Of a DNA stretch of 64,000 bases, positions 2,540-34,600 are shown one piece after another. Position 1 is the first letter of the stretch, and the number at the start of each line of letters is the position of its first letter. The notes below the pieces were generated by a model, which had not been told where the DNA came from, made no database searches, and saw nothing but the letters and a program-made list of their open reading frames with translations. The translations under genes were made by a program, and so were the position numbers. This DNA is from Pocillopora damicornis (taxonomy: Eukaryota): assembly GCF_003704095.1 (NCBI RefSeq), contig NW_020845295.1:1-64000 (forward strand), in the 5' to 3' direction.

Positions 2540-3983
2540 GATTAAATTTTCATAATCTTTTACGAGCTGGCAATACTGCTTCTATGAAAATAGTGAATAG
2601 AAACTGTAAAGATAATTTTCGTCCAAATTTAAGCTTGCAAAGATCCTTATATTTATTTGAAGTGATCTTAAAATCTTAGGCTTTATTTAAAATAACAGCT
2701 GACCTATCTATCTTTTGAATCCAAGTTTTTGCAAGAGACATACGTCATTGAAGGTAGTGAACAGAGTCAAGGATATTATTTTCACAATAACTTATGAAGG
2801 TTAGGTTTCCAACGCTGATAAATAAGCGCTTGCTTATGTACAAAGTCAAGGGTGAACCACATCCAAATTTATATTTGTAATACTTTTAATGGTCATAATT
2901 CGACTTAATTTCTGAGACAATCAGACTTCTCCATGATCAGCCATGGTTGCCATTCTTGAGCATAAGGGGTAAAATTATCTCCATTAGATGGAGTTAGATT
3001 TATAAAAACTTTAAACACACACAAACAAGACTCGTAAATTTGATATAATATCACAGGTGGATAATGGCTTCTAAGGCTGTTCCTTCCGTTCATCATAGAT
3101 ATTTGGTTTTCATGTCAACTTTTTTTAACGATAATTGATTAATTTGACAGATTAACAGATTAGCCGTTACTAACCTCATTCCAACAACAACCTCCCTACT
3201 TCAATCTCTTTTTCCCGTATTTAGAGCCAATCATTTCCTTATCTTAAAACCTCTAAAATTCGATTGGTCCAGTACAAGTAATGACCGCGCCCATGATGTA
3301 CACAGGATAGCCATTCGTTCACAATAATCTATAAATATTTCCTCGTTATTTACCCCATTACCCTTCCCTCCCCCACAAACAAAGGAAGTCAACCTTACGA
3401 TTGCCATATTTGTGAAGTCTTCCGGCTAATTAAAAGTCAATTTTATCCCGCCCACTTGGCTATGAGCCGAATTCAAATATTTAACTTGACTGAGCCATGC
3501 ATGTCTGTCTTGCAAGCTTGAAGTCATAACATGACTCTGTCCCAGGCGGCCGCATTTTTCTGCTCCAGTGATGGCCAAGCGATCGAATGACATTTGATTG
3601 TAAGTTTAATTTAGCATAAATAATGTTCTTTATGTGGTTTGAAATTACATCGATATACTTAAGCTCACAAAATCAAGCTGGTGCTTAAAATCATTACTAA
3701 AAATTGTTTTCAAAACAATAACCAATTCATTGGGCGAACTTTTGTTTGTGTATTTACACTGAGCAGGTACTCAAGGAAAATAAAACATGAGAATTACCAG
3801 ACCATTCAGTGTGTCACTGATATATTTTTTTGTGTAAATCTTTCGTCGATGTTGTATTGCAGGACCTACGTTTTCCGTGTTTTTTTTCGAAATATTAGTT
3901 TTTGCTGTTACAAAGAGCAGATTTCACGAAGGATGATGTTTTATGTGATGAAGTTCTATTGAGGGTCGGTCTAACAGGGTCTG

Positions 3984-6900
3984 ATGAGGGTCGACCACGT
4001 TCAAACTGCGTTAACGTCCCTCGTAGTTTTTCTACTCTTTATCCGGTTACATGGAAAAGCTATGAATGGAAGTGAATTCGGTAAGATGCCTTTGACGTTC
4101 ACATATTTTAAGTTTGTGTTTTTGTAGACATAAGAGTAACATTCAAAATTTACGGGTTTCCTAACACTCGTGAGCAATATGATTTGTAATTAACATGTCA
4201 CTGCAACAGCAGGGGTAGTAAAGTTTACAAAGATTAAAGTAACGTGGATTTCATCAAGTGTTTTGCAATTTAAGAAAATCAGTCCATTGAATAATAGGAA
4301 AATAATAGGTTTTTGGGGTTGGGTGGTGCGTAAACTTTGATCTGAAATTTGAGCTAGGGAAACCCTAGTTTTTTAGGGAGTTACAAGGTCAAAACCAAAC
4401 ATGGTGAATATAATCTGTAAGGTTGAAATACGGCTGAATTGGGCGTCGTCTGCATTTCTATAAAGAGGGTCTTGATGGGGTGATGGCTAAAATTTTGGCC
4501 ATTCTTGCGGCTAATAGTTAATTTTTCCGTTATGGTACTCTGATAATGACACTTACTACATTAGAAATGTTTTTACGGTTAACGTTTTTCACGACTACCG
4601 GTTAAATGTTGAATGTGTTCAATTTTTCTGCCAAACGGCTAAACTTTGGTTGTTTCTTTTATTAACGGTTAACCTCGTTGAGAACCTCTGTAGAGGAGGC
4701 GGTCCAGTCACTTTTATTGCTTTAAAAGGACAAATAGTGGTGAACCAGATTCCAAATCTGATTTATAGTTGAGTCAGAAACGATAGTTCATTCAAAACAT
4801 TTTGAAATAGTCAACAGGTTAGAATTTTCAACTCGGTTGGTGGTCAAAAGATTCTAAAAGCAGGTCTTAAGAAAGGACTGACCACTTTTGTAAACATCAC
4901 TGAGTTAAGAACACGCAATTGATCGTCCCACCCACGTGCACATGCACGATGTTCGAGTCACGTGTACCTCGCGACAAATCGTGTAACAGTTGTAAAGGCT
5001 GACCATTAACCAGAATTGATCGACCAGATAAGTCAATTTATGAGTGAAGCATATCCATCAGAATAGTGGTAAAATATAGGCAAACAGTTGCTAAGTAAAT
5101 AATGAAATTCTTGTTATAAATGAACCGAGATGGTCAGCTAGTCCTGATTGATGACCTGAGGCTTTAGTTCATCACGCTGTATGATTGGGCTGGAAAATTA
5201 GTACCAATTTCTCGTCAATCCGATTCCGGGCTAAACCAACTGCGACTTGGTCACTTGCGTTTTCCTGCGCTTCAGAAAGTTTGCTTGTTTTAGTCTCGAG
5301 TTTTTCATTGGCTCCGTATCGTATATATTTTTCTTCTGATTTGAAACTGTGGCCACTCTGATTTTGGTTTACCGAACCTCAAACTTAATGGCGCTTTATT
5401 GCGTTCAATTGGATAGCAGAAAGAAAGAACTTCGCCCAAACTCCTTTCAAGTGCTTCACCCCCTGTAACAGAATGTTTAGTGCCCCCGGGATTTCAGTTT
5501 ATTCTATAATAGTAAATAGAATGCAACTGCTCTTATTTCTCCAATAACAGTTATTATCGAAGGTGACATGATGGTTGATAAGCGCTTTATCGAGCATTAT
5601 ATGAGACGAATAAAAAAGCGTGGTGCCATCCTAAACCGAAGAGTTGGTGCGAGTTATTACTGGCCCGAAACAATAGTAGACGGAAACAAAATTGTGCGAA
5701 TACCCTATACACTGAACATTGGATTCTACAGTAGATTGTTCGGTAAGAAAAGTTATAACACGTAAATGATTCTTTCCCTTACCCTTCCACGTTCATTCCA
5801 TTTTACTGTTGTCAAATTGGCAAATTGATTCCTTGCTGCCATGCGTGTGTTCAATGATAGATCACAGATGATGTCAAGGTGTAATAGGAAAGCGCAGTCG
5901 AGTGTGACACTTATTTTGATGTCTTTTGTGATTTATAACCAAACAGACCAACTGTAATATGGAATCTATTTGTTTTATGCAATAGAGAAGCAAAAAGTGT
6001 TAATGGTGACGTTATATATGCGTCTGTCCTCCAATAGATCATAGCGCTTAGTTCAGCTTATTTACAATTCGGTGTTGTTGATGATAATGATGATGATTTT
6101 CATGAGGAGGGCTTCTGTTTGAAATATATCGCGTGTTTAAAATAGACCTCATCAGGAAATTATCAGCAATTTCAGTCATATCTGGGACTTCCTGCGAAGA
6201 AATATGTTGCATATTCCAAGAGGCTTTGTAATACAGATATACTCTATAAATTGACTATGGGTTGCTCTTGTCGTTCAGACTAATTTTGTTAGCCTGGATA
6301 CTATAGGGTAAGCCTTTAAAAAGCTCTCTTGCCACCGATTTAAAAGAGTTTTAAAGCACTTATTTGATAATTTTCCAAGTGAGGTAACGCTATACGCGAC
6401 ATGATAAATGGTATTATTTGATGTTTTCTTTTCAGGAAATGATATGGTAAATGGTTTTCTAGCAGCCGTCCAAGAATTTGCTAAGCGGACCTGCCTTCGT
6501 TTCGAAGAGAAAGAGGACGAAGACGAAGATTACTTAGAAATTTTCAGTGGTCCGGGGTAAGGAATTGAAAGATTGTAACGATGTTCCATTCTAATTTCCC
6601 CATGCATATGTATTAATCATTTGATGTGGCCTCTATGGAGTCTGATGAAGAAAAGATAGCCCACGTAGGAATGAACTCATTCACGAACGAACGCAAGTGT
6701 GCACGCACGCAGGCATGCACGAACAATGGATGGATGAATAAGAATGGATATTAGACAAGTAACGAAAAAGGATACTTAGAGCTAAGTTTAAAATGATCAA
6801 TCCCTTTCACAGTGTTAAGGTCTCATTCACCACATGATGAAGGGCTAACAATCGAGACGTAAGCTTTAGAGACTCTTTACGGTGGCCAGCTTACATTTTC

Positions 6901-9900
6901 AACTTAGTTGATGGAAGCAAATTATTTTGTAATGCCCTCCGCCGACGCAGTACCACAGTCTTTGTACAAACTTTTCCTCTTTTGATGAAAGTTGAGCCTC
7001 GCGGCTCTTTAAACACCTCGGCATGTCTTGCCTAGCTGATTATTCCCTGATCTGGATTGACAGATGCTTCTCTATGATTGGACGGCGCGGTGGCAAACAA
7101 GAAGTTTCACTTGGTAAAGGATGTGAGACGAAAGGGAAAGCGACCCACGAACTGATGCACGCCCTTGGGTTTTTGCACGAGCAGAGTCGAAAAGACAGAG
7201 ATCGACACGTTACTATCTTAACTCAAAATATTCTGGATGGTTTGTCAGAAATTCAATTATAAATGACACTTTCAATTTGGAATAACATATGACGTCAGAT
7301 ACTGTATGGAACTGCTTTAGAACAGATTTATCCGAACAATTCAGTCAGCCGTCTGGTTCGGTCAGTGAGTCTGATTCGGTCCACGATCAGAGTCAGTCAG
7401 TCAGTAAATGAGTCAAAAGTCAGTCATTTAGTCACGGTCAGTCAGTCAGTCTGTCAGTTAGTCAAGCAGTTGGTTAGTAAGTCAGTTAATTAGTCAGGCA
7501 GTCATTTGAACAGTCAAACAGGTGAATAATACTTGCTAGTCACTTCCGAACCAGCCAATGAGTGTTATTTACCTGTGTGGTACATACTTAGTATCAATAT
7601 TAACTACCTTTAAAAGGTGTTATCTTTTTTTTTTTTTTTTCACTCGGATTAAATGTTTCACAGTTTTATGCTCTGTTTACCTTTAAATTTGATATTTCCT
7701 CTTTCTAGTTGGAGTGTCAGAATTCAAGACGTATAACCAGGACAACGGCAACTTACCGTACGATTTTCACTCTATTATGCATTATAACAACAAGATTTTT
7801 AGCAAAAATGGTGAAGATACAATCCAAGCTCTCATCGACCCCAAGATGACCTTGGGGCAAGAATACGGACTTTCAGCATTGGACGTTGTAAGAGTAAACA
7901 TGTTATACAAATGTCCTCAGCTTCGGACGGATCGTAAGTGAATGTATGTTTTGTAATACACTTATCGTATCTACCTCTAGCTTTGGTGAATGGATTGTTC
8001 TGTCGGTTGAAGATTCAGTCAATCAGTGAATAAATATTCGATGAACGCGCCGATGATTGAATGGATGGATGAAAAAAAGAAGGAATGAAAAATGATTAAA
8101 TGAAGCAAACATTTAAAAAAGGAAGATGTGGGTAAATAAAGGAATCGAGTAGATAATAAATCAGATTGATTGATTGAATGAATGAAAATGAATAAAGGAA
8201 TGAATAGAAAAGTAGATAAATGGATGGATGGATGAACAGGAGGAATGATGGCTGAAATAGTTTCGACATTAAGACATAGAAACAAAAAAATTGCACAACC
8301 AGATATCAGCGTCACGCAAACCAGTTTGTCGTTTTCAAATCTTGACCTTCCGAGATTAATTAACTTTAACGGTATGCTCTTCTTTAAAGTTGCACAACTA
8401 AAAAATTTTTTTAATAATTACATTGTGCAATAGTGGTGCTCTACTTTGTCACTGTTTACACGTCTAATGATTACTGGGCCGGCACCGACTCAAGGGTTGA
8501 TATTGTACTTGACGGAGCGAAAGGGGACTCGGGAGAGATAGAATTGGAATCTCCTGAAGATGTTCCAGACCCATTTGAACGGGGAAGGTAAGAGTACTAC
8601 TTGCTTTATCTGTCACCTTCTAGTTGAACAAACCTGCTGTCTTATCCTTATTTGGCTTCAATCACATTGGTTGTTCCTGGAAGTGATGTTTTCGTATTAG
8701 TCAAAAGAGGATTAATATCCATATGAATAGTGACAATGATAATGATAATCATTTATTTCTAGGACTTTACATCAGTGCTTTTACAAAAATTGTAATAATT
8801 TAGGATCCGGGAACACCTTTACCATAATCATAATATAAAACCAAACAAAGAAGTAGATTGACATGCTCAAAGATTACATAAATAAGCCCTAAGTCTGTTT
8901 TAAAAATATCAACAGACGGGACGCTCCTCACGTCTAACAGAATTGTTCGTAAAACTACAGATGAGTATCGTGGTTAAGCATAAGTCGTTAATAGTGGTTC
9001 ACTTTTCGCCCGATTGTTGACGTCCCGCTCGTCATGAGAGCGGGGTGCTTGCGTACGAAGCTGGAAAATTTGAAGCTTTTTTTCATTTCAAGCTCTCTTT
9101 GAGGCTTGCCTTTGACTTAACAAGTATAGAGAACTGATAAAGAGACATTTTATATGATACTTGTTACCCAAAAAATATTTCTTATGTGATGATTAAATGT
9201 CCCTAATGTCTGAAATCTTATCATTTTCAGTAAGGATACATTTCCCGTAATTTCTCCTGCTGTTGGAGAATTAAAAAGGCTTCGTATCAGGTTGGTCGGA
9301 AGTAGCTGGAGCTGGTTCAATGGTTGGAAACTTGAAAAAGTAAGAAAAAAATTCTTTTCCGTCGTTCATCCTTGGAAAAGCTTTTAGGTCTTTATGACGC
9401 ATAGACAACAATAACTAGGACAACTTGTTAAAGGCGCACAGGACGAGAAAAGAAGCGTGGTTCATTTATACATCGGTGTTACTGTGCTTCTCCAACCCTT
9501 ATTGATATTTAGCACTGAAACGTTTAGTGCCAGCTATTTAAACAAAGTTTTAGACGTCGTGTAGCAAAACCGCGTTCCAAACTATCATGAATTTTGCTCA
9601 ATCTTTCAGCCGAACATTTATTTTTGTGAACTGTGTCAAGAGGTTCAAAAGCTAGCAGTGGAAAGGTATTTATTTCTCTTATAGAGAAAGGCCCACTGCT
9701 TGCGTAAAACTGCGGTTTGGCTTAGACCTCATGTAAATAACCGGCTCTCAGCATCGGTTATTGAAACGAGATCCAATTTTGGCGGCGGTTTTTGACGATC
9801 AATGGACTTTGAAAGTTCCTTATAGGGAGGTTTTGAAGTTATTAGATTTTTCTTTTAGTGTTAAATAGAAGCCCTTTGACAGTTTCGCAGAAACTTAAAG

Positions 9901-10521: not shown

Positions 10522-10685
10522 CGACGCATCCAATCCAATTATCTCGTTAATTTGTCCGTCAAAAAACCGGTCAATGTTCGGTCCACAATCGACCAATTGT
10601 GGTCGACGTATCCAATCCGACAATCTCGTTAACTTATCCGTCAAATAGTCGGTCAATGTTCGTTCTACAGTCGACCAATTGTGGG
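10522..10685 (+). repeat. 82-bp tandem duplication downstream of the astacin A stop
   Basis: CGACGCATCCAATCC...ATCTCGTTAA...GGTCAATGTTCG...TCGACCAATTGTGG repeated at 10522 and 10604. Confidence 0.8.
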
Positions 10686-12140: not shown

Positions 12141-15100
12141 ATGGATATACCTCATTTAACCAACATCTTGTCGAGTACTTTTGACCCAAACTTAAGAGAA
12201 GAAGCAGAAAAAACGTTGAATGAGGTAAAGTTTCATTAATTGCAATTTCTTTCGTGATTTGACCGATCGATTTCGTCAACACGCACATTGTTGGATATTT
12301 GAAACGGATCTAACGAACCGTTCTTCGTTTTTAATCAACAATTACGCCACTAAATCTTATATTTAAGCGAACTCTTAATTTTACAACTTTAAATTGGGCC
12401 AAACTTTTGGAATTTGGAATTGTTTTTCAATTCAAAAGAACTTTAAAATGAATTTTATTCGACTTATTTTTATTTTGGTCATGATTTTGTCACATATTTA
12501 AGATATAAATTCGATGAGTTATTATTACTTTTTTGGTTTCCTTTCTACAGATTCACAAGCATCCAGGGTTCCTCTCGCTTCTTCTTCAAGTCGTTATGTC
12601 TAACGATGTACAAATTCCTGTGAGACAGTCAGGTGCGGAAATTACTATTAATTAAAACTGATAACGTACGTACATTGTTAAATTTTAGCATATATGTCGC
12701 AATTCACAAGTCAAAAGATTAACTTTGGCATTGAATTGTTCTATTAATGAAAGGTCAATCGCTTAATATTGGAAAAGAAAGTTTTTCTTAATAATATCAG
12801 CAGAGTGACTTTTATTTGTGTTGGTTGAAGTCCAACGGAGTTAGTGATGTTCATGTTATTAAAACTATTGTACCAAATTCAAGAGAATGCAAAGTATTCA
12901 AGTTAAAAACTTTGATTTAAATTTAACCTCTACGCAACACAAGAAAACTTTAAAGAATCATTTTTGCCCTAAAAATAAGTGCACAGATAAAATTTTGCAA
13001 GAAGTGCAATTTATTTCTACGGGCCTTTTTAACCTCTTCTCAAGGATTAGTTATTCACCTAATGGTTCACTCAAGAATGATTAAACTTTTACACCCTAAC
13101 ATCAGTATCCACATTCTCTATGCTCTTCTCTATACATTTCTTTTGGTACTGACAAAGAGAGATCATTTAGTAATCAAAGCTTCTTGGGTTGCTGATCATT
13201 TTCTACATTCTCATAATGTTGATAGATTATTTAGCATACTTTTGTGAGGACAACTTTGATGCCGATCACCCTTAGAGTTAAAAGAGTTAAATTTTGCTTC
13301 ACTGAAACAGAAAATGTTTATGCTACATCTAACACCATCCTTGTAAAATGTTTTATTTGCCATCACCCAGTGAACCCGTTGATTTGAAAAGGTTAAAAAT
13401 GAAAAAAATAAAAAAAATAAAAAAAACTTAGTATAAGAAGCAAAATTTTAGTAATCAGTTTAATTGATGTTAACTATTTACTGGTAAATGATAAATATAT
13501 TAATTTAAGTAGAAACCATTTCTTACATATTCTGTAACATGGTTATTGGAAACATTTTGATCAGGAGAACAAAATTTAAGGATGGCCTTTACATGTTCTT
13601 GAAATGAACTTTTTGTTCACATGCCTGTTACTTGTATTTGTCACTATTTCTCTCCCAATAGGCTGGATTAAGCACACATTTTGATTGGTTCTGATGTTGC
13701 TAGCGATAATATTTTGGTTTTCTTATTATTGATTCAACAAATGTAAAACATAAAACTAAAAGATTCCCTGTTGCATTGGGTTTGTATGTTACCAGATTGT
13801 AGAAGAAGTGAAAATGCATTAAGAACATCAGTGACTCACTTGGCTGCATCTCATGTGCCACCTTTTGGTTCTTGCTTCATTTTGACATCATCTACATTTG
13901 TATTACTAAACAGAAGCACAGCAACATGGAATTTAATTGTTTATTTGATGATAGTGACTCATACAGCATGGTGATTTAAGAGTTAGCAAAAAGTTCTTGA
14001 TGAGGCCTATGGTAATGACAAAATGTATATTTGCTCAGCCAAATATTATGCTGTAAGCTATTGACTGCCAATGATTGCCTTTGTAGGTGTAATTTATCTC
14101 AAGAATATGATTGTCCAGTACTGGAAAGAGAGAGATCCTTCAGAACTTGCTGATACTAGTGCTGCATTTGTTATTGTTGAGCAAGATAAAGCTACCATCA
14201 GAGAAAATATTGTGGAGGCAGTTATTCATGCTCCTGAATTAATAAGGTAGAAATCTTGTAAAGCTACAGGTGTCTTTAAGTAAAGCTGAAGACAGGGCCT
14301 TAAGTGTGACTTTCAAATTGAGCTGTTATGATAGCCAGAGGGGAAATTTTTCTTATGATAAAAGAACAATTAAAAAAAAAACTGTGTGCATACTTTGCAG
14401 AATCCAGCTTACTGTGTGCGTCAGTCAGATTTTACGTCATGACTTTCCTGACAAGTGGCCTGGAGTGATTAACAAAGTGAATGGATTCCTGGCAGAGAAT
14501 AGTCAAGGGACATGGATGGGTGCTCTTCTTACCCTATATCAGATTGTCAAGAAATATGAGTAAGTACATGCTGTCTATTGCTATTTTCAAAAAATTCAAG
14601 CATGTGCATGTAACTTTACACTGGCGTGCAGTTGTTATTTTTTCAGAGTTTTTCATGGTTCCACTTTTAGAGCTTAGAAATATTAAATATGTACTGTTGT
14701 TTTTCTTAAAATTTGTGTTTATTTGGACTAGTCCCTTCAGTGATGTCACAGTTTATTAACATGTTTATTTTGTGGGTTATAATTAAGCTTTAATTAAAAG
14801 CTACCTGTTATTCTACACAAGGAGAAACATGTGAAATATGTGATGCACTCTAGAAAGCTCCCTAACCTGAAAGAGAGCTGTGTGCTTGTGTAGAGCTCTT
14901 TGTCTGTTGTGGCGGTTATGTTTGAGAACCAAATAGTATCTTTCTTCCTTTTTTTTTTGTTCACCCCTGATCCAAAGGTCCTTTTATTTTCTTTACAATT
15001 TCACTTTGAAAATCTAAGACTCCCTTTGTCTAATGGCTAGCAAAGGGACAATCCCAAGATGACTTTTAGGGCTACTGAAAATCATTTTTCTAGAAATGAT

Positions 15101-16109: not shown

Positions 16110-19100
16110 ACTCTAGCATTTCTTCAGGCTTCCCTTAAAGCTCATCAGTAATTATTTGTACGCATTGGTGTGGAAAGGATACTATAAAAGAAGTGTCTTG
16201 CAAAGGTGACAACACAGTGTCCAAGCTAAGTCTTAATTTTGGACCTCACGATCTGGAATAAAGTGCATTAACTGTCAAGTCGCCCTGTCTCCCCTTTAAC
16301 TCTTTAACCCCTAAGAGTTACTGGCGTCTCATTTCTCCTCACAATATCACCCTAGAATCACACTTTAATGTCATGATAATAAAGGAAATGACCAACTAAA
16401 GAAGCTCCTGATTTTTAAACAAATTCTCCTTGTTAGCACCTCAGGAAATGTACAGAGAACAGTAAAGAGAAAATGCATAATGATGATAATGGTGTTAAGG
16501 GTTAATATGAGCATACATGTGTGACTTAAAAAGAGAATGAATAGATCAATAACTAATATTTAGATTTAACCAAGCCTAAAAGCGGAGCTTGCATTTTTTT
16601 TTCCCGCACGTCTCAAGGGCACAACACCTTGTCCCAGCAAGGACTAGAACCCGGGTCGTCCAACTTGTAGCCCAGTGCACTGACCACTGGACTACTGAAC
16701 AAAGCTGCGGCGTTGGTGTGCCTGCAATACAGTTGACCACACATGTTAAAAGTAGCACCTTGTACAGTCATATGGTCGTACAGTCATATGGTCGTACATC
16801 CAAATTTTTTCAGCTTGATGGGTTACTACTATTTTGTATAGTTATGGGGCTATGCAAGCTCTGCTACAAGTAAACTTGAACACCTTCCCACCATGCTACT
16901 ATGTATTAACTAGTAAGTAAAAATGGAAACATCATGTTAAGGTTCAAATGTGACAACATCAATACATAGCAAATGGTCATGCACGCTCTCTTACCTGTAG
17001 TTGTGTGCTTTTTTTTCTTCTTTTGTACATTTAGGTTGCTCTGGAAGGTGATGAAGAAGAGTTAGCTAGACTACCCTGGTGGAAAGCTAAGAAATGGGCT
17101 CTGCATATTTTGTGCCGGTTGTTTGAGAGGTAAACCTGTCTTTTAGTACAGCACTAAACCCACTTGCATACATGTACCTGAGCATGTCAAAAAATTATAA
17201 TTTTGTACATAGTTTTGAACCAGGAAGAATAAGGAAACATCATCTTTCGTTGTGTTAGTGGTTTTCATTTTTGTTTTTTCTTTCCCCCTTTTACTCTTAT
17301 ATCAACATTTTGGTTGTCACCATTACTTTAATGTCCATAAAGAAATATTTAGGTGTTAGTCCTAAAAAGGGGTTTAAAGGGGAATATTTTTCTTTTTCTT
17401 TTTGCCTATTTGTGGGGCAGCTAACAAAGATGATGCTTTCATGTTTAAATGAGTCCTTTTGGTTTTCAGATATGGTACTCCAGGATCAATAACAAAAGAA
17501 TATGAGGAGTTTTCTGAGTACTACTGTAAACATTTTGCAGGTAAGTAAGCAAAGAGACTTTAGGTTTATCCCTTCAGTAAAAATGTTGCAAGGTTGTATA
17601 TTGAATTTTTTTATTGGGCTCACTTTCTGTGTATAGGTTTTTTCATCAAGGTTTCCTAGCATTTTTTATTTCTTGAAGTCAACCATCAAAGGAACCTCCA
17701 CCATAACATTATGGCCCATCCCAGAAGAAGTTAATACTGTGCTTTAGATTAGTTAACTTTGGGCTGAGTTTCAAAAAAAGGCAGGATTTATTTATTTAAC
17801 TGAGAACTTGTCTTTTCTCACAGTAAGTGTGACACAGATTCTTCTGAGAGTACTGGATCAGTACAGACGAAAAGTGTTTGTAGCTCCAAGAGTACTTCAG
17901 CAAACCATAAACTACTTGAAAAATGGGTGAGTAAATTTCTTTCACGTTGTTATAACGTTATGGGGATTACATTGATGCTGGTCTCAGCTTTGTAAATGCA
18001 GTTTGTTTGGCAATGATAAGTAGTGATATTCACCTGCTGTACAAATGGTGCTTCAAAGCATATTTTAAAGTGGTATTGATTTTTTGTCAAAAAAATATAC
18101 TTGTTTATTTTCCAGAGTTTCAAATTCACTTCATTGGAAAATAATGAAGCCCCATATCCAGGTAAAAGAGCAAACATACAAACAGAAAAGAGTTTTAAAG
18201 TTCAACTGAAGTTAGCTAGCAGGGATCACCCAGGCAGCTATAAATTAGTGTAATGAACACGCATAGTAGACAAACAGTAACAGACTCTAAGTTACCATAC
18301 TGGTATGTACAGTAACAATTGGAAATCTGTGGTTTGCAAAGTTTTTTTGATAGACAAACATTATGTGCAGTGCTTGGAATGGCAGTAGATTCCCTAAGAT
18401 GGAAGCCTGACTGTTGTTGGTTACCCTTTTTAAAAGCATTCAAGGTTTCTTTCCAGATCTGGATTTTAAAGGTTGATTGGAAAGGCCTAGTTGATGCTAT
18501 GGGAGTTAAGGCAATAGAATTGTCTGAAAAATGTTATGATGTTATATTTATAGGCAATAATCCAGGAAGTTGTGTTTCCTTTGATGTGTTACACGGAAGA
18601 GGATGATGAACTCTGGCAAGAAGATCCATATGAGTTTATAAGAGTTAAATATGGTGAGAAAGGGAATAATATACTTAAGTCCTAACCTGGAAACAGCTAA
18701 AGGGGCTTAGGCATGTAAACTTTAACAAATTTCTTAGAAAATATGTATATCCACTTTCCTGAATTGAGCTGAAAACTAGCATGTGGCAAACAAATTTCAA
18801 AAGCCAATTTTTTTTTTTACAGGATTGCAATAAGCAAAGATTTAATGGAATGAATATTTTTAAATGTTAAAAGATTGGCAGTTAAGTAACATCTTGCACA
18901 GGAATAACTAGGCACGTGTTTAAAAACTCAACAAAAAATTGAGGTGGCATTCACAAATTTTCTTCATATTTGAACTTTGAGTAGTCCAGTACTTTTAAAT
19001 AACCTGAAGCTTTGTCTCTTATTGACAGATATCTTTGAGGATTTTGTCTCCCCTGTCACTGCAGCAGCCACGCTTCTTCACACTGTAGTTTCAAAAAGAA

Positions 19101-22100: not shown

Positions 22101-25100
22101 AATTCTGAACACTCTGGAGACAATGTTGAATGTGATGGAAGGATCTAAAGCTGTAAGATGAATTTAATGTCATTGATTTGGTGAAGTTTTTATTTGGGTA
22201 CCTAGGTAGCTACTATTTTAGAGGAATAGTCCTTTGGTGACAAAGATTATTGATTGACTAAAATGTAAATTTTCTTAACACAGTGATATCATTTTTCAGA
22301 TTGTACTTCAACTGGAACAAGTCGTGATTTCTTTAATAGCCAAGGTTCTAGAGCTGTCTGTAATGGGTAAGGAGTAGATATTTTTTCTGGCTTACTACAT
22401 TTAAGCTATTCTCTCATTAATAGTGTTACTGTATTTCTGCGCAGAGTTCTATGAAGACATTCTGTCCATTATCTGCACCTGTACATGTTTTGAGATCTCG
22501 CAGTCCATGTGGGCAGTCTTTTACATGCTTTATGAAGCTTTCCAGAGGGATGCCTTTGACTACTTTGCAGGTATTGAGTCGTAATTTACTTTATGTAACC
22601 GTTGATGACTTGGAGTCCATGACATGTTGAGAAATGATTGCTTTAGGTATGTGCATCCCTTTCTACTTTGGAGTACATTTTTGAGGGAACCTTGCATAGT
22701 GAACTCTGAAGAATTACCTGCTATTTCAGGGTTTTTACTTGGCGGAAATTCAGCTGCGTGATTTTTACTCATCCAAAATGTATCATTTACTGTACGTTAG
22801 TCGCAGGATATGCTACTAGTAAAAAATTCATGAAGCTTAAACTGTATGCATTTTTGCCCCCCAGAAATGATGCCATGTTTACACAACTACATCACAGTGG
22901 ACACACCTGCCTTTCTAGCAAATTCAAAGAACCTTGAGATAATCTACAACATGTGTAAAAAGGTATGCCATATAAACATGTCGCTAATATTGTCCTTATT
23001 AAATTTAAAATTATACCTCTACGTGTTCACTTAATGGTCAAAGAATACGCATTTAAAGTATCCTGGCTTTTTACCCTTTAACTCCCACAACTGATTAATA
23101 TGAAACTTCTCCCTATTATATTCATACATTATTTAGCAAAAAGGCATTGAGAATACCCAAACATATCAAGTTGTAGTTATTATCTTGATCCGAGGCCAAA
23201 TTCTCAGGACTAATTTACAAGATAATTTATGGAAGCCAGAGGGGAGAATCGACAATCCCATTGTGGGAATTAAAGGGTTTACACTCAGGATTCTTTCCAT
23301 TCGTCATTAGATGTTAACAGATTCGTCAGCAGCAGAAGATCAGCAGTGCAATGCAGCAAAGCTGTTAGAAGTAACAATACTTCAATGCCATGGACAGATA
23401 GACCAGGTAAGGTAATTAACTGAATGGTTGTCAAATACAATAATTATTTAAATGACCCAGTGCTCGACGCTGCGACCGTTTTGGTCGCCGTGGCGAGCAG
23501 GGGAATATTTTAGCGACTGAATTCGCAACAGAAGTCTCCAATTTGACAACTTGGGCGCTTTTGTAGCAAGCTGTAGAAGTAACGAATAAAAGGGGTAAAT
23601 TTCTAAAGAAACTGTGGTGTTGCGTCCATGGGAGAGTATAACAGGGTAATTTCGTATTATCGACTGAGTTCATGACGTAAATTGGCCACCGTTAAGAGTT
23701 TCAAAGCTGACGTTTCGAGCGTTAGCCCCTCGTCAAAGCGAGGTTGCTCTGACGAAGGGCTCTGATAAAGGGCTAACGCTCGGAACGTCAGCTTTAAAAC
23801 TCTTAACAGAGGCCAATTTACGTTATAAACTTAGTTGATAACACCAAATTACTTTGTAGAGCTAACGGTTTAGAGACAGTTATACAATAAGCTGTAAATA
23901 TGGAATTCTGCGGTCCAACATTAAGCTCTAGCCCACACAGAGATTTCTTTGTTCTTTCAGTGGCTTCCGTTTTACATTGAAGCAGCGCTGGAGAGATTGA
24001 CAAGGGAGGTGAAGGAGAGTGAACTAAGAACTATGTGCTTACAAGTGGTAAGGGAGATCACAACAACACATAGTTTCAGTAGAAACGAGCAGTAAACGTC
24101 CTCAAGCAGTATATTTCTCAGGGACTTGTGACATAAAGCTTTCTTTTTGCATCTCAGTGAAATGTTGATGGAATCGATCCATCAAAGTTTTGAATGTACG
24201 TTTCAAGTTTCCCAAAGTCGGTTTTTTTTTTAAAGATAGAGAATTAAGGAGGTGAAAACTTCGTGACAAAAGTGAAACACGTAGCTGCAACTTCGTTGTT
24301 TGTTTTTGGTTTTTTTTGCTGGCCTGTCACTTAGTTATGGCTTCATTGAAACTTTTGTTTCAGAGCTTACTAACTGCGTTTGTTTTGTGATTCCAGGCTA
24401 TCGCGGGGTTAATATACAATACTCCCCTCCTATTAAGTATTCTGGACAAACTCCATTTTCCAAATACGAACGAAACTGTGACGGCGCAGTTTTTTAGTCA
24501 CTGGGTTAGTGACTACGACTGTTTTTTCGGGTAAGCGGAGACAAAATATTTTGATTTTGGTACTTTTAGCGTTTTGAGACAATCGAGAACATGATATTTG
24601 GCGCTGTTGCTCCAGATGACTTCGTTCGGTCCGATTTGGTTTTTTCCGACATTGTAATTACCAACTTGCACTGGGAAACTTACTCATTTCCTGGGGAGGA
24701 ATCACTTGGTTTTCAGGGAGGGATGGATGGGGGATCAGTCGTCGATAACAGAGTATAAATGAGAACTATAAAAAAGAGACTACCAGTGGGGGTGGGAAGG
24801 AGGAATCGTGAGAATACAAAAGAGCCTTAAGGGGGATCAGGTAAATTTTATCGAAACACAACTTAAGTCCTCCGACCCACCCTCCCCTCCCTGCTGGCGA
24901 AAAAAAAATGAGCAGTTCTTAGGGATCCCGTATTGTAGCATCATTTAGGGTAACTTTTGATTTTCCTTGTTAATCTTTCCAACTTCTGAGTTCTCGTGTG
25001 TTGTACCTGCAACTGGTCAACAGGTGTCTTCCTATTGTCTCATTGCATATACTGATTGCTTGAACTTAATTCTAACATTCATTAGATTTTAGACTAAGGA

Positions 25101-28100
25101 GTAGTGAAGATTTATGTCCTCGATTAGCCTAGCTGTTACTGATGAACTCTGGCTACTCTTTTCTGTTGTAGTATTCATGATCGCAAGATGTTTGTGTTGG
25201 GTTTCTGCGCACTCATGGATCTTCCAAAACAGATGAGACCACAGGCCCTCCTTCAGTGCTCGCCCCAGATTCTCCCGGCCTTGTTAGTGTTATTCCAAGG
25301 ACTCAAAAGAGCGTATGAAAGTATGGGCTATATTTCCACATAGTGAAATGTTGACTTTACTGTATATTTCTCGCTGGTCTCCTTAACAACCGTTGTTTAG
25401 TTGATAAGGAAACAATTTTTCAACCTTAACACTGTAAAATACATTTATTCAGAAATTTGAACAATGATTAAAGCCTGCTGTTGCTGCCGGTTTTCTTTTT
25501 TAAGTTAATTTTGGTTGTACAACTGAGTTTATAATATAAATTGGCTACCGTAGAGAGTTTCTAAAGCTGAAGTCTTTAGCGTTCGCCCCTCGCCATTCGC
25601 CCTGACGCAGGGGTAATGGTCGAAACGTCAGTTTTAAGAAAGTTTCTACGGTGACCAATTTACATTTTAAAGTCAGTTGGTAAAACGCTATTATCTCGTT
25701 ATGCCCCCCTCCCCTCTCCTCCCCTCCCCCACTGACATTGCACCATACTTTCTTCAGGAACTTACCCCCTTTATTCATTTGTTTCTTCTTCGTGATGCCA
25801 ATCATATTCAAATCAACGTGATATTTTCATTTGTTATTTGATTGTTTTAGACCGAGGTGAAGGCGAAGGTGAGAATGAAGATGACGAGGAAGGGGCATCT
25901 GATGAAGGTGAGCCTCCGTCTCTTGGCGATTTTCCCGTTTGTCTTGGGGTTTATCTTTTCTCTTCTTTTATTGGCACTGAGGCGTCGTGGCTTAATTTTT
26001 TTAGAAGCTGGATTTGAAATCCAAAGGCCATGCATTTAATTCCCTAGCTCTGCTACTCAACTCTAATTTATATCTCGCAAGTGCAGACTTCAGTCTTCCA
26101 CGGCCATTTATCAGGTGTCAACAAGTTTCTCTTCTCTTAGTTGGAATTCTTGATGATTTACTTTCTCTATACTCTACTCACACTTGCGTTGCATCTAGAT
26201 GCTAATTTTCACGTCTTTTGGTCTTGTCGTTTCGAAAATACAGGCTATGAGATTCAATTGTTATTTCAAGACAGTATTCGGCAGCCTCTACATTTTTCAA
26301 CGATTAATTTTGGATGGAGAAACAACGCCAAAAAACCTTGTCGCACGGACGACTATTTTTGCTCCATTTGTGAGAGTTTTGACTCATTTTTATTCTGTAC
26401 TTTTTCTTAGATGAACTAGCGAGTGACGAGGATGAAATAAACGAAGATGACATTCAGTATATTGAAAATTTGGCGAAAAAGGTAGAAATATGTCTTACTG
26501 ATGCAAGGTTTTAACAGATAACAAACTAAATGAAAAATTGACTTGCCGACCTTAAAACGAATTGATGTCAGACAATTGATTAATTAACTGACTGATAAGC
26601 TGACTGGCTGAATCTATACTCAACGAACGACTGGATCGACCGACCAGTTGATTGACTGACTACAAATTGGCTGGTCTTTAGGCTGAGAAATAATCGGATC
26701 AAAAAAGATACTAGCACAATATTCCGGAAAGTAAGTGCTCAAGGTAGCTCGTTCGAAACGCCGAATACACTATCTAGATTTTTGCCAGTTTGGCTGCAAT
26801 TGATAATAATGCATAGTTCATGTTTTGAAGGGGGAATCATTGCGGTTTTTATCGCCTTACATGCTCATTATTCTGAGCGTTCCTTAGTGAACTGCACGGG
26901 TGATGCGCTGAGCTTGAGTAACCGGAAAACGTGATTACATATTGAAACTAAATTCTGTTCGTGTAGATTTGAAAAAATCGTGGACAAGGCCATGTTAACT
27001 TATGGAATTTTACAGGTTCGAAATAATACGAACCGTACGTACAAAAGCAATTTGTCAAGGTGAATGACCCCTTGTGAAAATGGATCAATGCTAACAGTGA
27101 GCACCATCATTATCTTAAGAACCTAGCGTGTTAAACTCTTATATTTACAACCGTGAAATCCTATTTTTGCCCTCTTGCAGGCCGCTGACCACTTAGATGA
27201 TGAAGATGATGTGGAAGATGAGGAGACAGCTCTGGAGAATTTTACTACATCTGTGGATAACGAAGAAACTGATGAATATATTGCGTTTAGGAATTCACTC
27301 CAAGGTGAGTACAGGGTTGGCGTCGTGTGATTTGCATGCGTTTCTTTTGCGTCGGCAAAAGCAATAGAAGTATTAAATGTTAGTGTTTTGTCCGTATCGC
27401 TCATGTTAATGTTATGTGTGGGTTAGAGTAAATGTGTTCAACTTTTAGCCCTTCAGGCCAATGACCCAGAATGGTATTCTGCTTTGACAAGTGTGTTAAC
27501 AGAAGAGCAGGGCAATTCACTACAGGAAGTGCTTGTACTGGCGGAACAGAAGAGAGCTTCACTAGGTGAGAACTGTGCCAATTATCAACCAGCCAAAAAG
27601 GGTGAAATAGTAGAATAGTCGAACGTAACTTTTAGGTCAGTCATTTTTATGTCAGTTGGTCAGTCTGTAGGCCAGCCAATTTGTTGGTCAGTCTGTCGGT
27701 CAATCGTTGGGTGAGTTATTTAGCGAGTCAGCTGATCTGTCAGTTAGTTCATCAACTGCCAGTCATCAATTCATTTTAACCCTTTAAACCCTTAGAGTGA
27801 CCAGCATTTAATTTCTCCCTGCAATATCTGCCCGAATCACACATTAAGGTTATGAGAATAAAGGAAATGGTCACCGGAGAACGAACCTTTTGATTGGCAA
27901 ACGAATTCTCCTTGTTAGCGCCTTAGGAAATGTATAAAGAACAGTGTGCAGAACACGCATTCTAATGTTAGGGTGGAAAGGGTTAAAGGTTGGCCCGCGG
28001 GAAAGTGTGAGGCTTTGAGCAGCGCGAGCCGCCAATCTTCCCACAGGCGGAGAAACGTGCTTCCTGCAGTGCAAAGTTAAGGGCGTGCTTACAGGCTGTT

Positions 28101-29987: not shown

Positions 29988-31636
29988 TTAGGAAGCATTT
30001 ACAGTAACAGTCTCTCCAGGATAAACATCTCTTTCGCCGAAAATGTAAGTTTTGTCTCCGTCTTTGACGGTGATCTACAGAAGAGTAAAAGATTCTTATG
30101 ATAAGTGCTACGATAAGGTACTTAAGATCACTTTTAGCTTTTTAAAGTGGGTTCGTTAAGTAACATAAAAACCTTGCAGTGATCGTTTAACATCCGGCGT
30201 AGAAAAACGATTAGGTGGTAAGAATAAACAAAAAGTAACGGGAATGGTTATAGAAGGTAAAGATTTACACGGATTGCAATTGAAGGAGACAAAATAGTTT
30301 CCAAGATTCACCAGTGGTGACGTAGCTTCTTTGAAGTAACTTTTCCCAGCTTGCTGTAACTGTTATTAATCGATGCAACTCCATTTTATTGGAAAAAGAC
30401 AAGAACGTGATGTGATACGAGTTAAAAGCCTAAACAGAGGGGAACATTTTATGATCAAGGTGGTACAGTTTTTAGAGCGTTTTATTTGGCTCTAAATTAA
30501 AGCGCTCACCTTAAAATACATGTACGTTCCCTTGATTTTAACATCAAGTTCCTCTAAAACTTTCCATGTTACATGGAAAGTTGTTGAAGAAATGTGATTT
30601 TGCTTGCCTGAAAGGCCAGATTCCGAGACAAACGCGCCAACTATTACCTAGACTTTTCTTCGAGTATACTTTATGAAATTTAGTTCTTGCATGTTTGTCG
30701 AGCGATTTGTTAAGTGCACAGTTGTTTCAGTAAATCTTACCTTAGCAACAGTCCACCCGTCAAAATAACTTCCGTCAGGGTTTTCTTGTAATCTGATCTT
30801 CAGCTTTCGAATAGTGCCCACGTCTTTAAATGCCACAAGGTAGTTGTCTTTCCTGAAATAAAAAAAACAAAACAAAAAACTAGTCAGTCCTCACATGTGC
30901 TTGTCAAATTAAATTTCTTAGACACCCTTAGTGAATTACTCAAACATCACCAAATACGGTCATTTTGATCTAATCAGAGATATTTTGGGTCTTCTCCGCC
31001 ACTGAAAAGTAACTTGACTTTTCGAAAGTTGTCTCCAAACATGCTAAAATAGTCCTATTATGGACGCTACCATTGAAAAACAGCTTAGTGACCTGGCGAT
31101 AGATGCGATACCATAAAACGTGGTCGAAAACAGCTGCGTCACTGGTTATCACACGAAAAAAAAAATTTTAGGCAAATATGCCTTTCGCTATGGCTCCTAA
31201 TTGTTCGAACTGATCATCAAGAGGTTGAAAAAATGGAAATGAGGCTCTGTTTCGTCTTAGATAGCGGCAACGCAAGACTCAAAATATCAGCGTCCTACAT
31301 AAAATTTTCACCACGTTCAAAGACAATCTTCGAAAGGTTGGGTTACTCTCTGAGATTTCACAAAGCAGCCAGTGTTATCATTTTACCAATACTTTTTAAT
31401 GACAGAGATAGAAATTACACGGTTCTGGAGTATAATACTCCGATCCTTTGAAGGTTTGATTAAAGTCCTTGTGTGTGACTAACCAAACGAAAGCTGATGG
31501 TGCACTTTTAAAATATTTAACCGTACTTTTAATTGCTCTGACGAAGGGCTAACGCTCGAAACGTCAGCTTTTTTACCCTTTACGGTGGCTAATTTACGTT
31601 TTCAACCCAGTTGTTGACACTAAATTACCTGCTATA

Positions 31637-31681
<45 letters not shown>

Positions 31682-34600
31682 TTTATTTTTAACTTACTGC
31701 ACAGGGTAGTCCAGCGTTTAAATCTGTCATTAGATAAGGTAGACCTAACCACTTTTAAGTTAGATCAGATTCCAATCTTTCCTTTAACTTCACTTCAAAT
31801 TTCTAAAACTAATTTTCAGATAGATGAGATCCTCAAAAAGACAAAATCTTAGAAATACCGCGTATTTAAAGATGCAGGTTTAATTTTGATTATGGCAATA
31901 AACGACATCGGTTTTTTTTTAATCAATATATAACGTAGATGTGACTTACAAAAATACTTAACTTGTCTTGACTGTATCGTAAGAATGTTAGTTAAGTTTA
32001 ACAATTCGCTCTAATCGCAACTCACGCATTCCCCTCAAAGTCGTCGTAAAGGCCGCCTTTTGCAACACTACTCTCCCCAGAGCTCCCCTTATCACCGATC
32101 AGCTCGAGGTACAAAAAGGCGTCGGAACCATCCCAATATCCATCACCAGTTTGCACCATTACCTCCATGTTTTTATCTGAAGAATAAAACAAAAGATCAG
32201 ACATAACTCCATTCCGTTACGTGTCTCGAATAACGTTATGAAAAGCAAGGCAACCGCAGCTCTGAACCATAGGAGTGACCAGCATTTATGATCTTTCACT
32301 ACAGAAGTACTACTGAATCATTCATTAGGGTCATGATAATGAAAGAAGTGATAGCCAACTTAAGAGGCTTTGATTTTAAACAAATTCTCCTTGTCAGCAC
32401 CAAAGGAAAAGTATAGAGAACAGTAAAGAGAAAATAGAGACTGATGTTAGGGCGTAGAGGGTTTAAGTTTGAAAAGAAAGAGTAGCTTTTCAACAGATGA
32501 TTGTTACGGCTCCCAACAACATACACAATGACGAATACACATAAGTTAGAGTGAACGCTCTTTGGAGCTCTTCGTGATTCGATAACGACAAAAATATATC
32601 TTATTTAGGACACTTGATCGACGTAAAGTGCGTCACGATGTCAAATCGGTCTGCTTACCGGACCTGTTAACCGATCATGTCTACGTGGGATATTTATTTA
32701 ACCTTAACACTCGAGTGAGAAAGGAGGAATTCTTCTTCATGGTGTCAATACATTTTCAAGCAGAAGGGTAACGGGAAGAAAAATTAGGTCTATGTTTGAT
32801 TTCACGCCAAATTTCTCGCACGAAAATTTCAACAAATGTATGGTAGAAAATGTAAATAATTTGATTTCTTGATCTTGAGAGTGAAAGGAGTAATTGCTTT
32901 CAGATTGGCAATAAAATAAAAACCCTACTTATGAAGTTATCAATTGTGTTTACATTTGCAACTTAACATAGTCAGATTGTTCAATAGTTCTATTGCCTTT
33001 TCCACTTACACACGTCGTTTTTCTGTAGGCAGTTGTAAAACTTGTTAATCTTCATGATATCAGCCGCGGACATGGCGTTTTCGTTGCCAAGCTCCATATT
33101 AGGATCCGACCTCGCTTCCATGGTGACCAGGCCTGATGACTTAGCAAATGTGGTCTTGCTGTATTGCATGATGGACTTGAAGTCGTAAGCAAAGCCCAAA
33201 TTGTCCATGTCAGTTTTCTTCATGACTTCGTCCTTAACAGCTATTAAATAAAGAAGATGCCTTTCAGGTGATTCATAACTACCTTAAATAGCTTTTACAA
33301 AACAATCTTAAATTCTCTTGTCGGAGACTTTGTGATTCGTGCGTGATACATGTCAGATGACGAGTGTGAACATTATGTCAAGAGCTAGAAGCATCACCTT
33401 TAGTGATTTTGGGACATTGATCGGCTTACATGATCAACATAACCTTGAATGACCTTCTAAATCATTACTTAGCAACAACAAATCACAATATAAAAAATAT
33501 CGTATAAGAGAGTGATTTCTTTCAAATTTTGCAGAGTAGCTGTTTACACGCCCGTTNNNNNNNNNNNNNNNNNNNNNNNNNNNNNNNNNNNNNNNNNNNN
33601 NNNNNNNNNNNNNNNNNNNNNNNNNNNNNNNNNNNNNNNNNNNNNNNNNNNNNNNNNNNNNNNNNNNNNNNNNNNNNNNNNNNNNNNNNNNNNNNNNNNN
33701 NNNNNNNNNNNNNNNNNNNNNNNNNNNNNNNNNNNNNNNNNNNNNNNNNNNNNNNNNNNNNNNNNNNNNNNNNNNNNNNNNNNNNNNNNNNNNNNNNNNN
33801 NNNNNNNNNNNNNNNNNNNNNNNNNNNNNNNNNNNNNNNNNNNNNNNNNNNNNNNNNNNNNNNNNNNNNNNNNNNNNNNNNNNNNNNNNNNNNNNNNNNN
33901 NNNNNNNNNNNNNNNNNNNNNNNNNNNNNNNNNNNNNNNNNNNNNNNNNNNNNNNNNNNNNNNNNNACATTAAGGTCACGAGAATAAAGGAAATGTTCAT
34001 CAACTGAGGAAGCTCTTGATTGTTAAACAAATTCTCCTTGTCAGTAACGTTCGAAATGAACAGAGAACAGTATGGAGAATATGCATACTGATGTTAGGGT
34101 GTAAAGGGCTAAGCTTGTACCTTTCATCTAATTTCTCTTGTTTAGAAACCCTGATGAAACACGATGCACGAGTTTTGAAATAGTAGATCAGAGTTTACAG
34201 GGACATGAGTACTTTATTTGTGATATTTCTGCCTTGACTTGACAAGGGTAAAAGAGATAAAAATAAGAGGGGGTTGAAAAGGTCACTGAGTCAACAATTT
34301 TTTCGCCAACTGTAGATTACAGTAAGAAAAAAAGTAAAGCATAATTGAACAAGGCCTACCTGGATCAAGATTGTCTTCATAAATTTTCAAGTATGAATCT
34401 CGATCCTTTCGGTTGTGTTCGTGATAAAACCCCAGCAGATGAACGATCTCGTGTAAAATTGTTCCTTTGTATTCGCAGCCTGTTCCAAGAATAACATCTT
34501 GCTTTCCTGAGCGTTTCCCAATTTTGGCAAAGCATCTAAAAATTATCAATAAAGTTACTAAGAACCCTATGAAAGAATAAAATTTAAATTAGGACCAAAC

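What the first reader, a model, noticed from the sequence alone, without database searches (positions are those of the whole stretch)
31531..31690. Dispersed ~155-bp repeat whose head is a minimal hammerhead ribozyme
Seen: GCT-CTGACGA-A-GGGC-TAAC-GCTC-GAAAC-GTC-AGC has all hammerhead core nucleotides, a 4-bp stem II, a GUC cleavage triplet and a stem III reduced to the palindrome ACGT. The same head plus a conserved ~120-nt body occurs at four loci in 64 kb (6831, 23584/23746, 25543/25600, 31531). Established: minimal type-I hammerheads with a palindromic stem III occur in the pseudo-LTRs of Penelope-like retroelements and in non-LTR retrozymes, and are thought to cleave as dimers. Inference: this is a high-copy, non-coding, ribozyme-bearing retroelement family. 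It would usually be annotated only as an unknown repeat.
Basis: partly seen in the sequence, partly recalled or inferred. Interest (0 to 1): 0.8.

Follow-up and report, generated by a model that had tools for sequence, protein, structure and literature searches.

The report
Penelope retrotransposon tail with minimal hammerhead
The 157-base repeat is the 3' end of a young, high-copy Penelope-like retrotransposon that carries that family's usual minimal hammerhead ribozyme motif: a real and well-supported feature, but an ordinary example of something described since 2014.

Summary
Window 31535-31568 has every hammerhead core base, a 4-bp helix II, the ACGT palindrome in place of helix III, and a GUC triplet ending at 31565.

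The unit (about 31531-31686) is a discrete insertion. RNA-library contigs from four runs join 31526 directly to 31687, which is an empty site. The genome holds about 2,000 candidate copies, many 98-100% identical.

In longer copies the unit lies 89 nt after the stop of an ORF with reverse transcriptase and GIY-YIG endonuclease domains, so it is the 3' module of a Penelope-like element (PLE). The family also shows these PLE hallmarks:
- variable 5' truncation;
- head-to-head inverted partial copies inside a single 10-15 bp target-site duplication;
- two alternative 3' ends, the PLE "tail".

At least five other motif families in this genome share only the core. Helices I and II covary between families, and the hammerhead is the best-conserved part of the unit.

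Rfam models do not detect the motif. The monomer prefers an alternative hairpin, and catalysis is untested.

All of this matches Cervera & De la Peña 2014. It is a new member of a known kind and of low interest. The scan already reached the same reading on another piece of this genome (s1-762920).

The parts
31527..31686 (+). Segment absent from the empty-site allele. It comprises one copy of the target-site duplication plus the ~157-nt element (element proper about 31531/31533-31686).
   Evidence: in each of four RNA-library runs one contig joins 31526 directly to 31687. The ends are not GT-AG. One search gives the element ends from 30 genomic copies.
31687..31692 (+). Second copy of the short target-site duplication TTTT(AA). 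The first copy is at 31527-31532.
   Evidence: Other copies have 10-15 bp duplications.
31535..31568 (+). Minimal type I hammerhead motif: helix I GCT/AGC, core CTGACGA, unpaired A, helix II GGGC/GCTC with loop TAAC, GAAA, ACGT palindrome in place of helix III. The predicted cleavage is between 31565 and 31566.
   Evidence: It matches the published min-HHR features.
31569..31630 (+). Variable middle of the unit, including the T6 run that is specific to the youngest subfamily.
   Evidence: 24% mismatch to older copies against 10% in the hammerhead. All 10 shared subfamily differences within positions 39-100 lie here; joints skip this part.
31631..31636 (+). Alternative 3' end (unit positions about 101-106). 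This is the inner reverse-transcription start site inferred from copies that stop here.
   Evidence: 20 of 67 hits at 90% identity or more end at unit 95-110, both as inverted partners and as long copies.
31637..31686 (+). PLE 'tail': an AC-rich stretch and a stem-loop (AGTTTC 31660-31665 paired with GAAACT 31670-31675), ending in CCCCTTTAT. This is the outer reverse-transcription start site.
   Evidence: 39 of 67 hits end at 150-157. The concept comes from Frangieh 2024.
23589..23741 (-). Older full copy (unit 3-154, 86% identity). Its hammerhead core is mutated (C3>U).
23759..23852 (+). Head-to-head partial partner of the previous copy (unit 5-98). Core mutated (G8>A, plus a change in GAAA).
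25503..25595 (-). Older partial inverted copy (unit 9-100, 72% identity).
25597..25775 (+). Older full copy (unit 3-157, 67% identity, with an insertion). Core mutated (A9>C).
6835..6973 (+). Older solo copy (unit 9-146, 74% identity). Core and helix II have decayed.

Best explanation

Shown:
- The module lies 89 nt after the ORF stop.
- It consists of a minimal type I hammerhead motif, a variable spacer and a conserved AC-rich 'tail' with a stem-loop.
- Copies are inserted with 6-15 bp target-site duplications.
- Copies end at one of two fixed 3' positions.
- Copies are often accompanied by a head-to-head partial copy inside the same duplication.

Inferred, by analogy with the Anolis element studied in vitro:
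- The element's protein nicks both DNA strands and starts reverse transcription internally on the RNA at either of two sites.
- Most templates are short RNAs that begin at unit position 1, just 5' of the hammerhead. A TATA-like box sits 31 nt upstream of that position in long copies.
- The hammerhead is kept by selection in the master lineage and probably cuts the element's RNA after GUC (31565). It would do so only as a dimer or with protein help, because helix III is only the palindrome ACGU.

Inserted copies then decay neutrally, as the three older loci in the window show.
For: Element identity:
- ORFs upstream of the unit carry RVT_1 with a YIDDC motif (E 1e-6) and GIY-YIG (E 3e-4), with a CX4CX2C linker.
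- ESM Atlas look-alikes are RVT_1 + HTH_animal + GIY-YIG clusters of animals, score 0.95.
- Copies are truncated at the 5' end to varying extents.

Insertion signature:
- Inverted partial plus full copy lie inside one target-site duplication in at least 8 loci.
- 3' ends are bimodal.
- An empty-site allele exists for the window copy.

Hammerhead:
- All core bases are present, as are the four non-imposed features listed by Cervera & De la Peña 2014: an unpaired base after A9, G10.1-C11.1, a palindromic 15.2-16.2, and covarying helices.
- On 32 motifs from 6 families, 72.8% of cells pair, against 55.5% in shuffles (0 of 500 reach it) and 25-42% when the partner is slid. Eight of 9 pairs change on both sides.
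- Two other PLE lineages in this genome carry the motif about 100-205 nt after their ORF stop.
- Mismatch to older copies is 10% in the hammerhead against 24% in the middle of the unit (p 1.6e-10).
- The pattern occurs 1,724 times against 24 for the control.

Start of the short RNA:
- A TATA-like box lies at -31 in long copies, and solo copies start at position 1 plus or minus a few bases.
Against: - No Rfam hammerhead model matches any of the families, even at E up to 10.
- The predicted lowest-energy fold of the monomer is a different hairpin, CUGACG/CGUCAG, at -12.3 kcal/mol. It buries core bases. The hammerhead fold scores -6.8, and the trans ACGU helix is worth only -3.1.
- No DNA copy class starts at the predicted cleavage product (unit position 36), so cleaved RNA is not the usual template.
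- The RNA data were contigs only, so no RNA ends could be read.
- Published minimal hammerheads cleave poorly in vitro, and cleavage is dispensable for insertion in vitro.
- The Pfam scores for family A are just under the curated cut-offs: 28.9 against 29.6 for RVT_1 and 21.4 against 22.6 for GIY-YIG.
- No full-length tandem (pLTR-ORF-pLTR) copy was recovered.
Confidence: 0.85

Rival explanations
1. The motif is kept as a plain structural hairpin, for example a binding or folding element for the element's protein or a transcription signal. On this reading its likeness to a hammerhead has no catalytic consequence.
For: The lowest-energy fold is the CUGACG/CGUCAG hairpin. Published minimal hammerheads have very low activity, and the Anolis hammerhead is not needed for insertion in vitro. 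No DNA copies start at the cleavage product.
Against: The alternative hairpin cannot form in families D and E, which have different helix I sequences, yet the core bases are identical there. What is conserved across lineages is the hammerhead core with covarying helices I and II, not the hairpin.
Confidence: 0.1
2. The unit is a non-LTR retrozyme: a non-autonomous tandem repeat that is cut by its hammerheads into monomers, circularised, and copied back into DNA.
For: It is short, non-coding, AT-rich and has a type I hammerhead. Retrozymes are known in a stony coral, and a 2026 preprint derives them from PLE pLTRs.
Against: No head-to-tail arrays appear in the window or in 75 loci. The helix I is open, so the loop 1-loop 2 contacts of canonical retrozyme hammerheads are absent. 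Unit ends are fixed and flanked by target-site duplications. Long copies continue into a PLE ORF.
Confidence: 0.03
3. The unit is a tRNA-derived or Pol III SINE moved by a LINE. On this reading the head is an internal promoter-like hairpin followed by a T-run terminator.
For: The GCTCGAAAC stretch loosely resembles a B box and is followed by T6. Target-site duplications of 10-15 bp fit target-primed insertion.
Against: ARAGORN finds no tRNA. The T6 run is absent from older subfamilies. There is no A-rich or microsatellite tail. The unit is continuous with a PLE ORF, and its head-to-head architecture is PLE-specific.
Confidence: 0.02

Closest known systems
Minimal hammerhead ribozymes (min-HHR) of Penelope-like elements (Cervera & De la Peña 2014, PMC4209133)
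   Same: It is a type I motif with no helix III or loop 3, only a palindrome at 15.1-16.1. It has an unpaired base between A9 and G10.1, a conserved G10.1-C11.1 pair and a short helix I. There are thousands of mostly single copies per genome, and some lie as pairs on opposite strands. It sits in the terminal repeat region of PLEs and was reported from cnidarians to vertebrates.
   Different: Helix II here is only 4 bp, where the paper notes 6-8 bp in many families; families B-D of this genome do have the longer form.
Poseidon PAc of Anolis carolinensis (Frangieh et al. 2024, PMC11167929)
   Same: It has an RT + GIY-YIG ORF and a hammerhead upstream of an AC-rich stem-loop where reverse transcription starts. 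Two start sites define an optional 'tail', and both DNA strands are cut and extended, which explains the inverted partner copies.
   Different: In PAc the hammerhead overlaps the ORF start and the tail is 30-40 bp. Here the motif lies 89 nt after the ORF stop, the tail is about 52-56 nt, and no tandem master copy was seen.
Non-LTR retrozymes of metazoans, including the coral Acropora millepora (Cervera & De la Peña 2020, PMC7229834)
   Same: They are short, AT-rich, non-coding units with type I hammerheads in a stony coral genome. That paper also counts thousands of PLE-like minimal motifs there.
   Different: Retrozymes are tandem arrays with canonical, efficient hammerheads and circular RNAs. 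This unit is dispersed, minimal and attached to a PLE.

Membership tests
Hammerhead ribozyme, minimal PLE variant | Catalytic core CUGANGA ... GAAA and a cleavable triplet (NUH) in type I order | tested here: met
   CTGACGA, GAAA and GTC ending at 31565.
Hammerhead ribozyme, minimal PLE variant | Helices I and II supported by pairing and covariation | tested here: met
   72.8% of cells pair, against 55.5% in shuffles (0 of 500 reach it) and 25-42% when slid. Eight of 9 pairs change on both sides.
Hammerhead ribozyme, minimal PLE variant | Unpaired base between A9 and G10.1, G10.1-C11.1 pair, and palindromic 15.2-16.2 without loop 3 | tested here: met
   In one search the G10.1-C11.1 column reads GC 23 and GU 1. 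ACGT is present; family E has ACGCGT.
Hammerhead ribozyme (canonical, Rfam models) | Match to an Rfam hammerhead covariance model | tested here: not met
   no hammerhead hit at gathering score or at E up to 10, for any family. This is expected, because the models include a helix III hairpin.
Hammerhead ribozyme (canonical, Rfam models) | Loop 1-loop 2 tertiary contacts | tested here: not met
   Helix I is open and only 3 bp plus 2 bp, with no loop 1.
Hammerhead ribozyme, minimal PLE variant | Site-specific self-cleavage | not testable with these tools
   Only Logan contigs were available, so no RNA ends could be read. Folding favours an alternative hairpin.
Penelope-like element (EN+) | [quoted passage not shown] | tested here: met
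   though family A scores are just under the Pfam cut-offs. Family E GIY-YIG scores 28.2 bits, above the cut-off. Atlas score 0.95.
Penelope-like element (EN+) | 5' truncation, an adjacent inverted copy, and an optional tail at one end | tested here: met
Penelope-like element (EN+) | Partial tandem giving direct pseudo-LTRs around a full ORF | tested here: inconclusive
   No full-length copy was recovered.
Penelope-like element (EN+) | RT groups with PLE/telomerase RTs in a phylogeny; clade assignment | not tested
   Only the CX4CX2C linker points to a Neptune-like clade.
Non-LTR retrozyme | Head-to-tail tandem arrays of 150-450 bp units | tested here: not met
   copies are solo or head-to-head.

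The most novel reading that the evidence does not exclude
In this family the hammerhead may be the first 35 nt of a short, TATA-driven transcript that starts in the 3' UTR of long copies. Cleavage would then remove the capped 5' end. That could act as a switch between a capped RNA and a 5'-OH template or circle precursor. The ~2,000 solo units would be reverse-transcribed copies of the uncleaved short RNA.
Probability: 0.15. Interest if true: 0.5.

Novelty: new member of a known kind. Interest (0 to 1): 0.2.

Why it matters
The main value is for annotation. Thousands of these units and their fold-back pairs in this genome should be masked as Penelope-like element ends, not reported one by one as novel ribozymes or palindromes.

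The family is young (98-100% identical copies, plus an insertion that is absent from other samples). It also shows the two 3' ends and the double-strand priming signature cleanly. It could therefore serve as a natural data set for the PLE insertion mechanism, and for testing whether minimal hammerheads cut in vivo.

Tried and rejected
- **Rfam.** I scanned the window at gathering score, the unit at E up to 10 and four loci of other families. No hammerhead model matched.
- **tRNA.** The ARAGORN scan of the unit and its flanks found nothing.
- **Full-length copies.** Copies picked from a protein search of the genome were broken, gapped or of another family.
- **Candidate pLTR pair.** A 3.7-kb direct repeat in L041 with a hammerhead-like motif in each arm looked like one. 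No sense-strand PLE ORF lies between the arms, so I left it.
- **Snap-back synthesis** as the origin of the inverted partner. I rejected this for two reasons. The partner also adjoins long copies whose 5' end lies far upstream (L016, L034). Long copies also exist that simply end at unit position about 101-106.
- **Pol III terminator reading of the T6 run.** Rejected, because the run is missing in older subfamilies.
- **RNA ends.** Read laying gave contigs only, so it shows no starts or ends and gives no support for or against cleavage or the proposed start site.
- **Species.** The assembly size (234.35 Mb) equals the 234 Mbp quoted for Pocillopora damicornis. That is a hint, not an identification.
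Full report
**Observation**

It has the helix I strand GCT, the core CTGACGA, one unpaired A, helix II GGGC/GCTC closed by TAAC, GAAA, the palindrome ACGT in place of helix III, C17 at 31565, and the returning helix I strand AGC.

The 30-nt head occurs three times in the window at up to 3 mismatches, against none expected by chance. Repeat finding and BLAST confirm copies at 6835-6973, 23589-23741(-)/23759-23852(+), 25503-25595(-)/25597-25775(+) and 31530-31687. Only the last copy has an intact core; the others carry core mutations.

**A discrete, young, high-copy insertion**

The assembly has 234.35 Mb in 4,393 contigs. The 160-nt query gives 2,083 first-look candidates, and all 40 full-length matches among those scored are 98-100% identical.

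Aligning 30 oriented copies with their flanks gives these features:
- The 5' end is fixed within a few bases, at (A)ATCGCTCTGACG.
- The 3' end is CCCCTTTAT, often followed by TCAT.
- Target-site duplications are 10-15 bp.

In four polyA RNA-library runs, a contig joins window 31526 directly to 31687. The missing 160 nt do not have intron ends and are flanked by TTTT(AA). This is an empty site, so the window copy is a recent or polymorphic insertion. The same runs hold more than 1,000 contigs with the unit, and these run on into diverse flanks. Because they are contigs, they say nothing about RNA ends or expression level.

**What it belongs to**

In 7 of the 30 copies the unit is preceded by a shared upstream sequence. 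Fetching more DNA showed copies truncated at the 5' end to varying extents.

The upstream ORF has these features:
- a GIY-YIG domain behind a CX4CX2C linker;
- in longer copies, an RVT_1 domain with YIDDC;
- in L037, an open frame through to the stop, with the unit beginning 89 nt later.

ESM Atlas look-alikes are animal clusters carrying RVT_1, HTH_animal and GIY-YIG, with a score of 0.95. RT followed by GIY-YIG is the architecture of endonuclease-positive Penelope-like elements. The Pfam scores for this family fall just under the curated cut-offs. The call therefore rests on both domains together, the motifs and the insertion architecture.

**Insertion architecture**

Many insertions have the form: inverted copy of unit positions about 1-101, then a spacer of 4-30 nt, then the direct copy 1-157. 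The target-site duplication flanks the whole composite (L003, L009, L010, L015, L017, L019, L025, L029).

The outer end of the inverted partner is fixed (about 101-106), while its inner end varies (1, 10, 12, 21, 53). Long copies that simply end at about 101-106 also exist (L035, L038, L042, L044). Among 67 hits of at least 90% identity, 39 end at unit 150-157 and 20 at 95-110.

This is the published PLE signature of 5' truncation, an adjacent inverted copy and an optional "tail". In vitro work on the Anolis element explains it: both strands are cut and extended, and reverse transcription starts at two internal sites in an AC-rich stem-loop, the tail being the stretch between them. Here the tail is about 52-56 nt, AC-rich, and holds a stem-loop.

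I considered snap-back synthesis as an alternative and rejected it, because the inverted partner also adjoins long copies (L016, L034).

**Is the hammerhead real?**

Rfam finds nothing. This is expected, since the minimal variants lack the helix III hairpin and were originally found with a custom descriptor.

The comparative evidence is strong:
- The pattern CTGANGA-N10-20-GAAACGTC occurs 1,724 times in the genome, against 24 for the reversed control. The exact family-A motif makes up 36 of the first 100 rows listed.
- At least five other families share only the core. Families D and E sit about 100-205 nt after the ORF stop of other PLE lineages.
- All of them show three features the pattern does not impose: an unpaired base after A9, G10.1-C11.1, and a palindrome at 15.1-16.1. 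Cervera & De la Peña list exactly these as arguments against chance.
- On an alignment of 32 distinct motifs, the 9 pairs of helices I and II are paired in 72.8% of cells. Shuffles give 55.5% (0 of 500 reach the observed value), and sliding the partner gives 25-42%. Eight pairs change on both sides.
- In 16 older copies chosen without regard to the motif, mismatch to the young unit is 51/493 in the hammerhead, 214/891 in the middle and 52/381 in the tail (Fisher 1.6e-10 for hammerhead against middle). Differences shared by most older copies number 0 of 34 positions in the hammerhead and 10 of 62 in the middle.
- The RNA contigs show the same two conserved blocks, with joints that skip the middle.

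**Limits on the catalytic claim**

- The predicted monomer fold is an alternative hairpin (-12.3 kcal/mol) that buries C3-G8. The hammerhead fold scores -6.8, and the trans ACGU helix is worth only -3.1.
- That alternative hairpin cannot form in families D and E, so it is not the conserved feature.
- Published minimal hammerheads cleave weakly as dimers.
- The Anolis one needs protein and is dispensable for insertion in vitro.
- No class of DNA copies begins at the predicted cleavage product.

I therefore regard the motif as a selected hammerhead whose activity is probably conditional. I have not shown cleavage.

**An inference of my own**

Long copies carry a TATA-like box whose first T lies 31 nt before unit position 1, and the position itself looks like an initiator. 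This is also where solo copies begin and where inverted partners usually stop.

This suggests that most templates are short RNAs starting just 5' of the hammerhead. It is untested.

**Comparison and verdict**

Everything matches the minimal hammerheads of PLEs described in 2014, including in cnidarians. A stony coral was later reported to hold thousands of such motifs.

There are no tandem arrays, so this is not a retrozyme. It is not tRNA-derived.

The scan's own notes list 59 hammerhead findings in this genome. One follow-up (s1-762920) reached the same reading on another piece; I consulted it only after reaching mine.

This is a new member of a known kind, and interest is low. I built no consensus of the coding element and proposed no repair of it.

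Noticed in passing
window 31300-31526 and 31687-31900: The single-copy flanks of the insertion are present in polyA RNA-library contigs of four runs at low depth, with 1-7 differences. The insertion therefore lies in a transcribed region, or the libraries carry some DNA.
   Followed up: partly
window 55324-56559: Eight copies of a 60-nt core recur at multiples of 84 nt (60-73% identity) in a purine-rich stretch (AT skew about 0.3 over 52-64 kb). It looks like a coding 28-residue repeat.
   Followed up: no
window 16359-16510, 27841-27992, 32378-32471, 33967-34118, and inverted at 13081-13177: A second dispersed repeat family of about 95-150 nt (70-77% identity), unrelated to the hammerhead unit.
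   Followed up: no
window 10522-10684: A tandem duplication of an 81-nt unit (85% identity).
   Followed up: no
window 57507-57588 and 58083-58164: An inverted repeat of 82 nt (84% complementary) with 494 nt between the arms.
   Followed up: no
L041:236-1016 and 3946-4715: A 3.7-kb direct duplication (89-97% identity). Each arm carries a further hammerhead-like motif (family F, CTGAAGA ... GAAACGTC) at 339-386 and 4049-4096. No sense-strand PLE ORF was seen between the arms.
   Followed up: partly
L057 (reverse strand), about 1400-4600 of the stored locus: A nearly full-length PLE of another lineage, with RT motifs and GIY-YIG at 28.2 bits. Its hammerhead has an ACGCGT palindrome and a 5-bp helix I, and lies about 205 nt after the stop.
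   Followed up: partly
L045:1806-1849: A histone 3' stem-loop (Rfam RF00032) at 34.7 bits, just above the gathering score. It lies next to an ORF end in a locus fetched for family B.
   Followed up: no
L013, L014 (flanks of the unit): Short extra pieces lie between the target duplication and unit position 1: a 13-nt repeat of the unit's first bases, and an 8-nt inverted piece. They suggest template jumps at the RNA 5' end.
   Followed up: no
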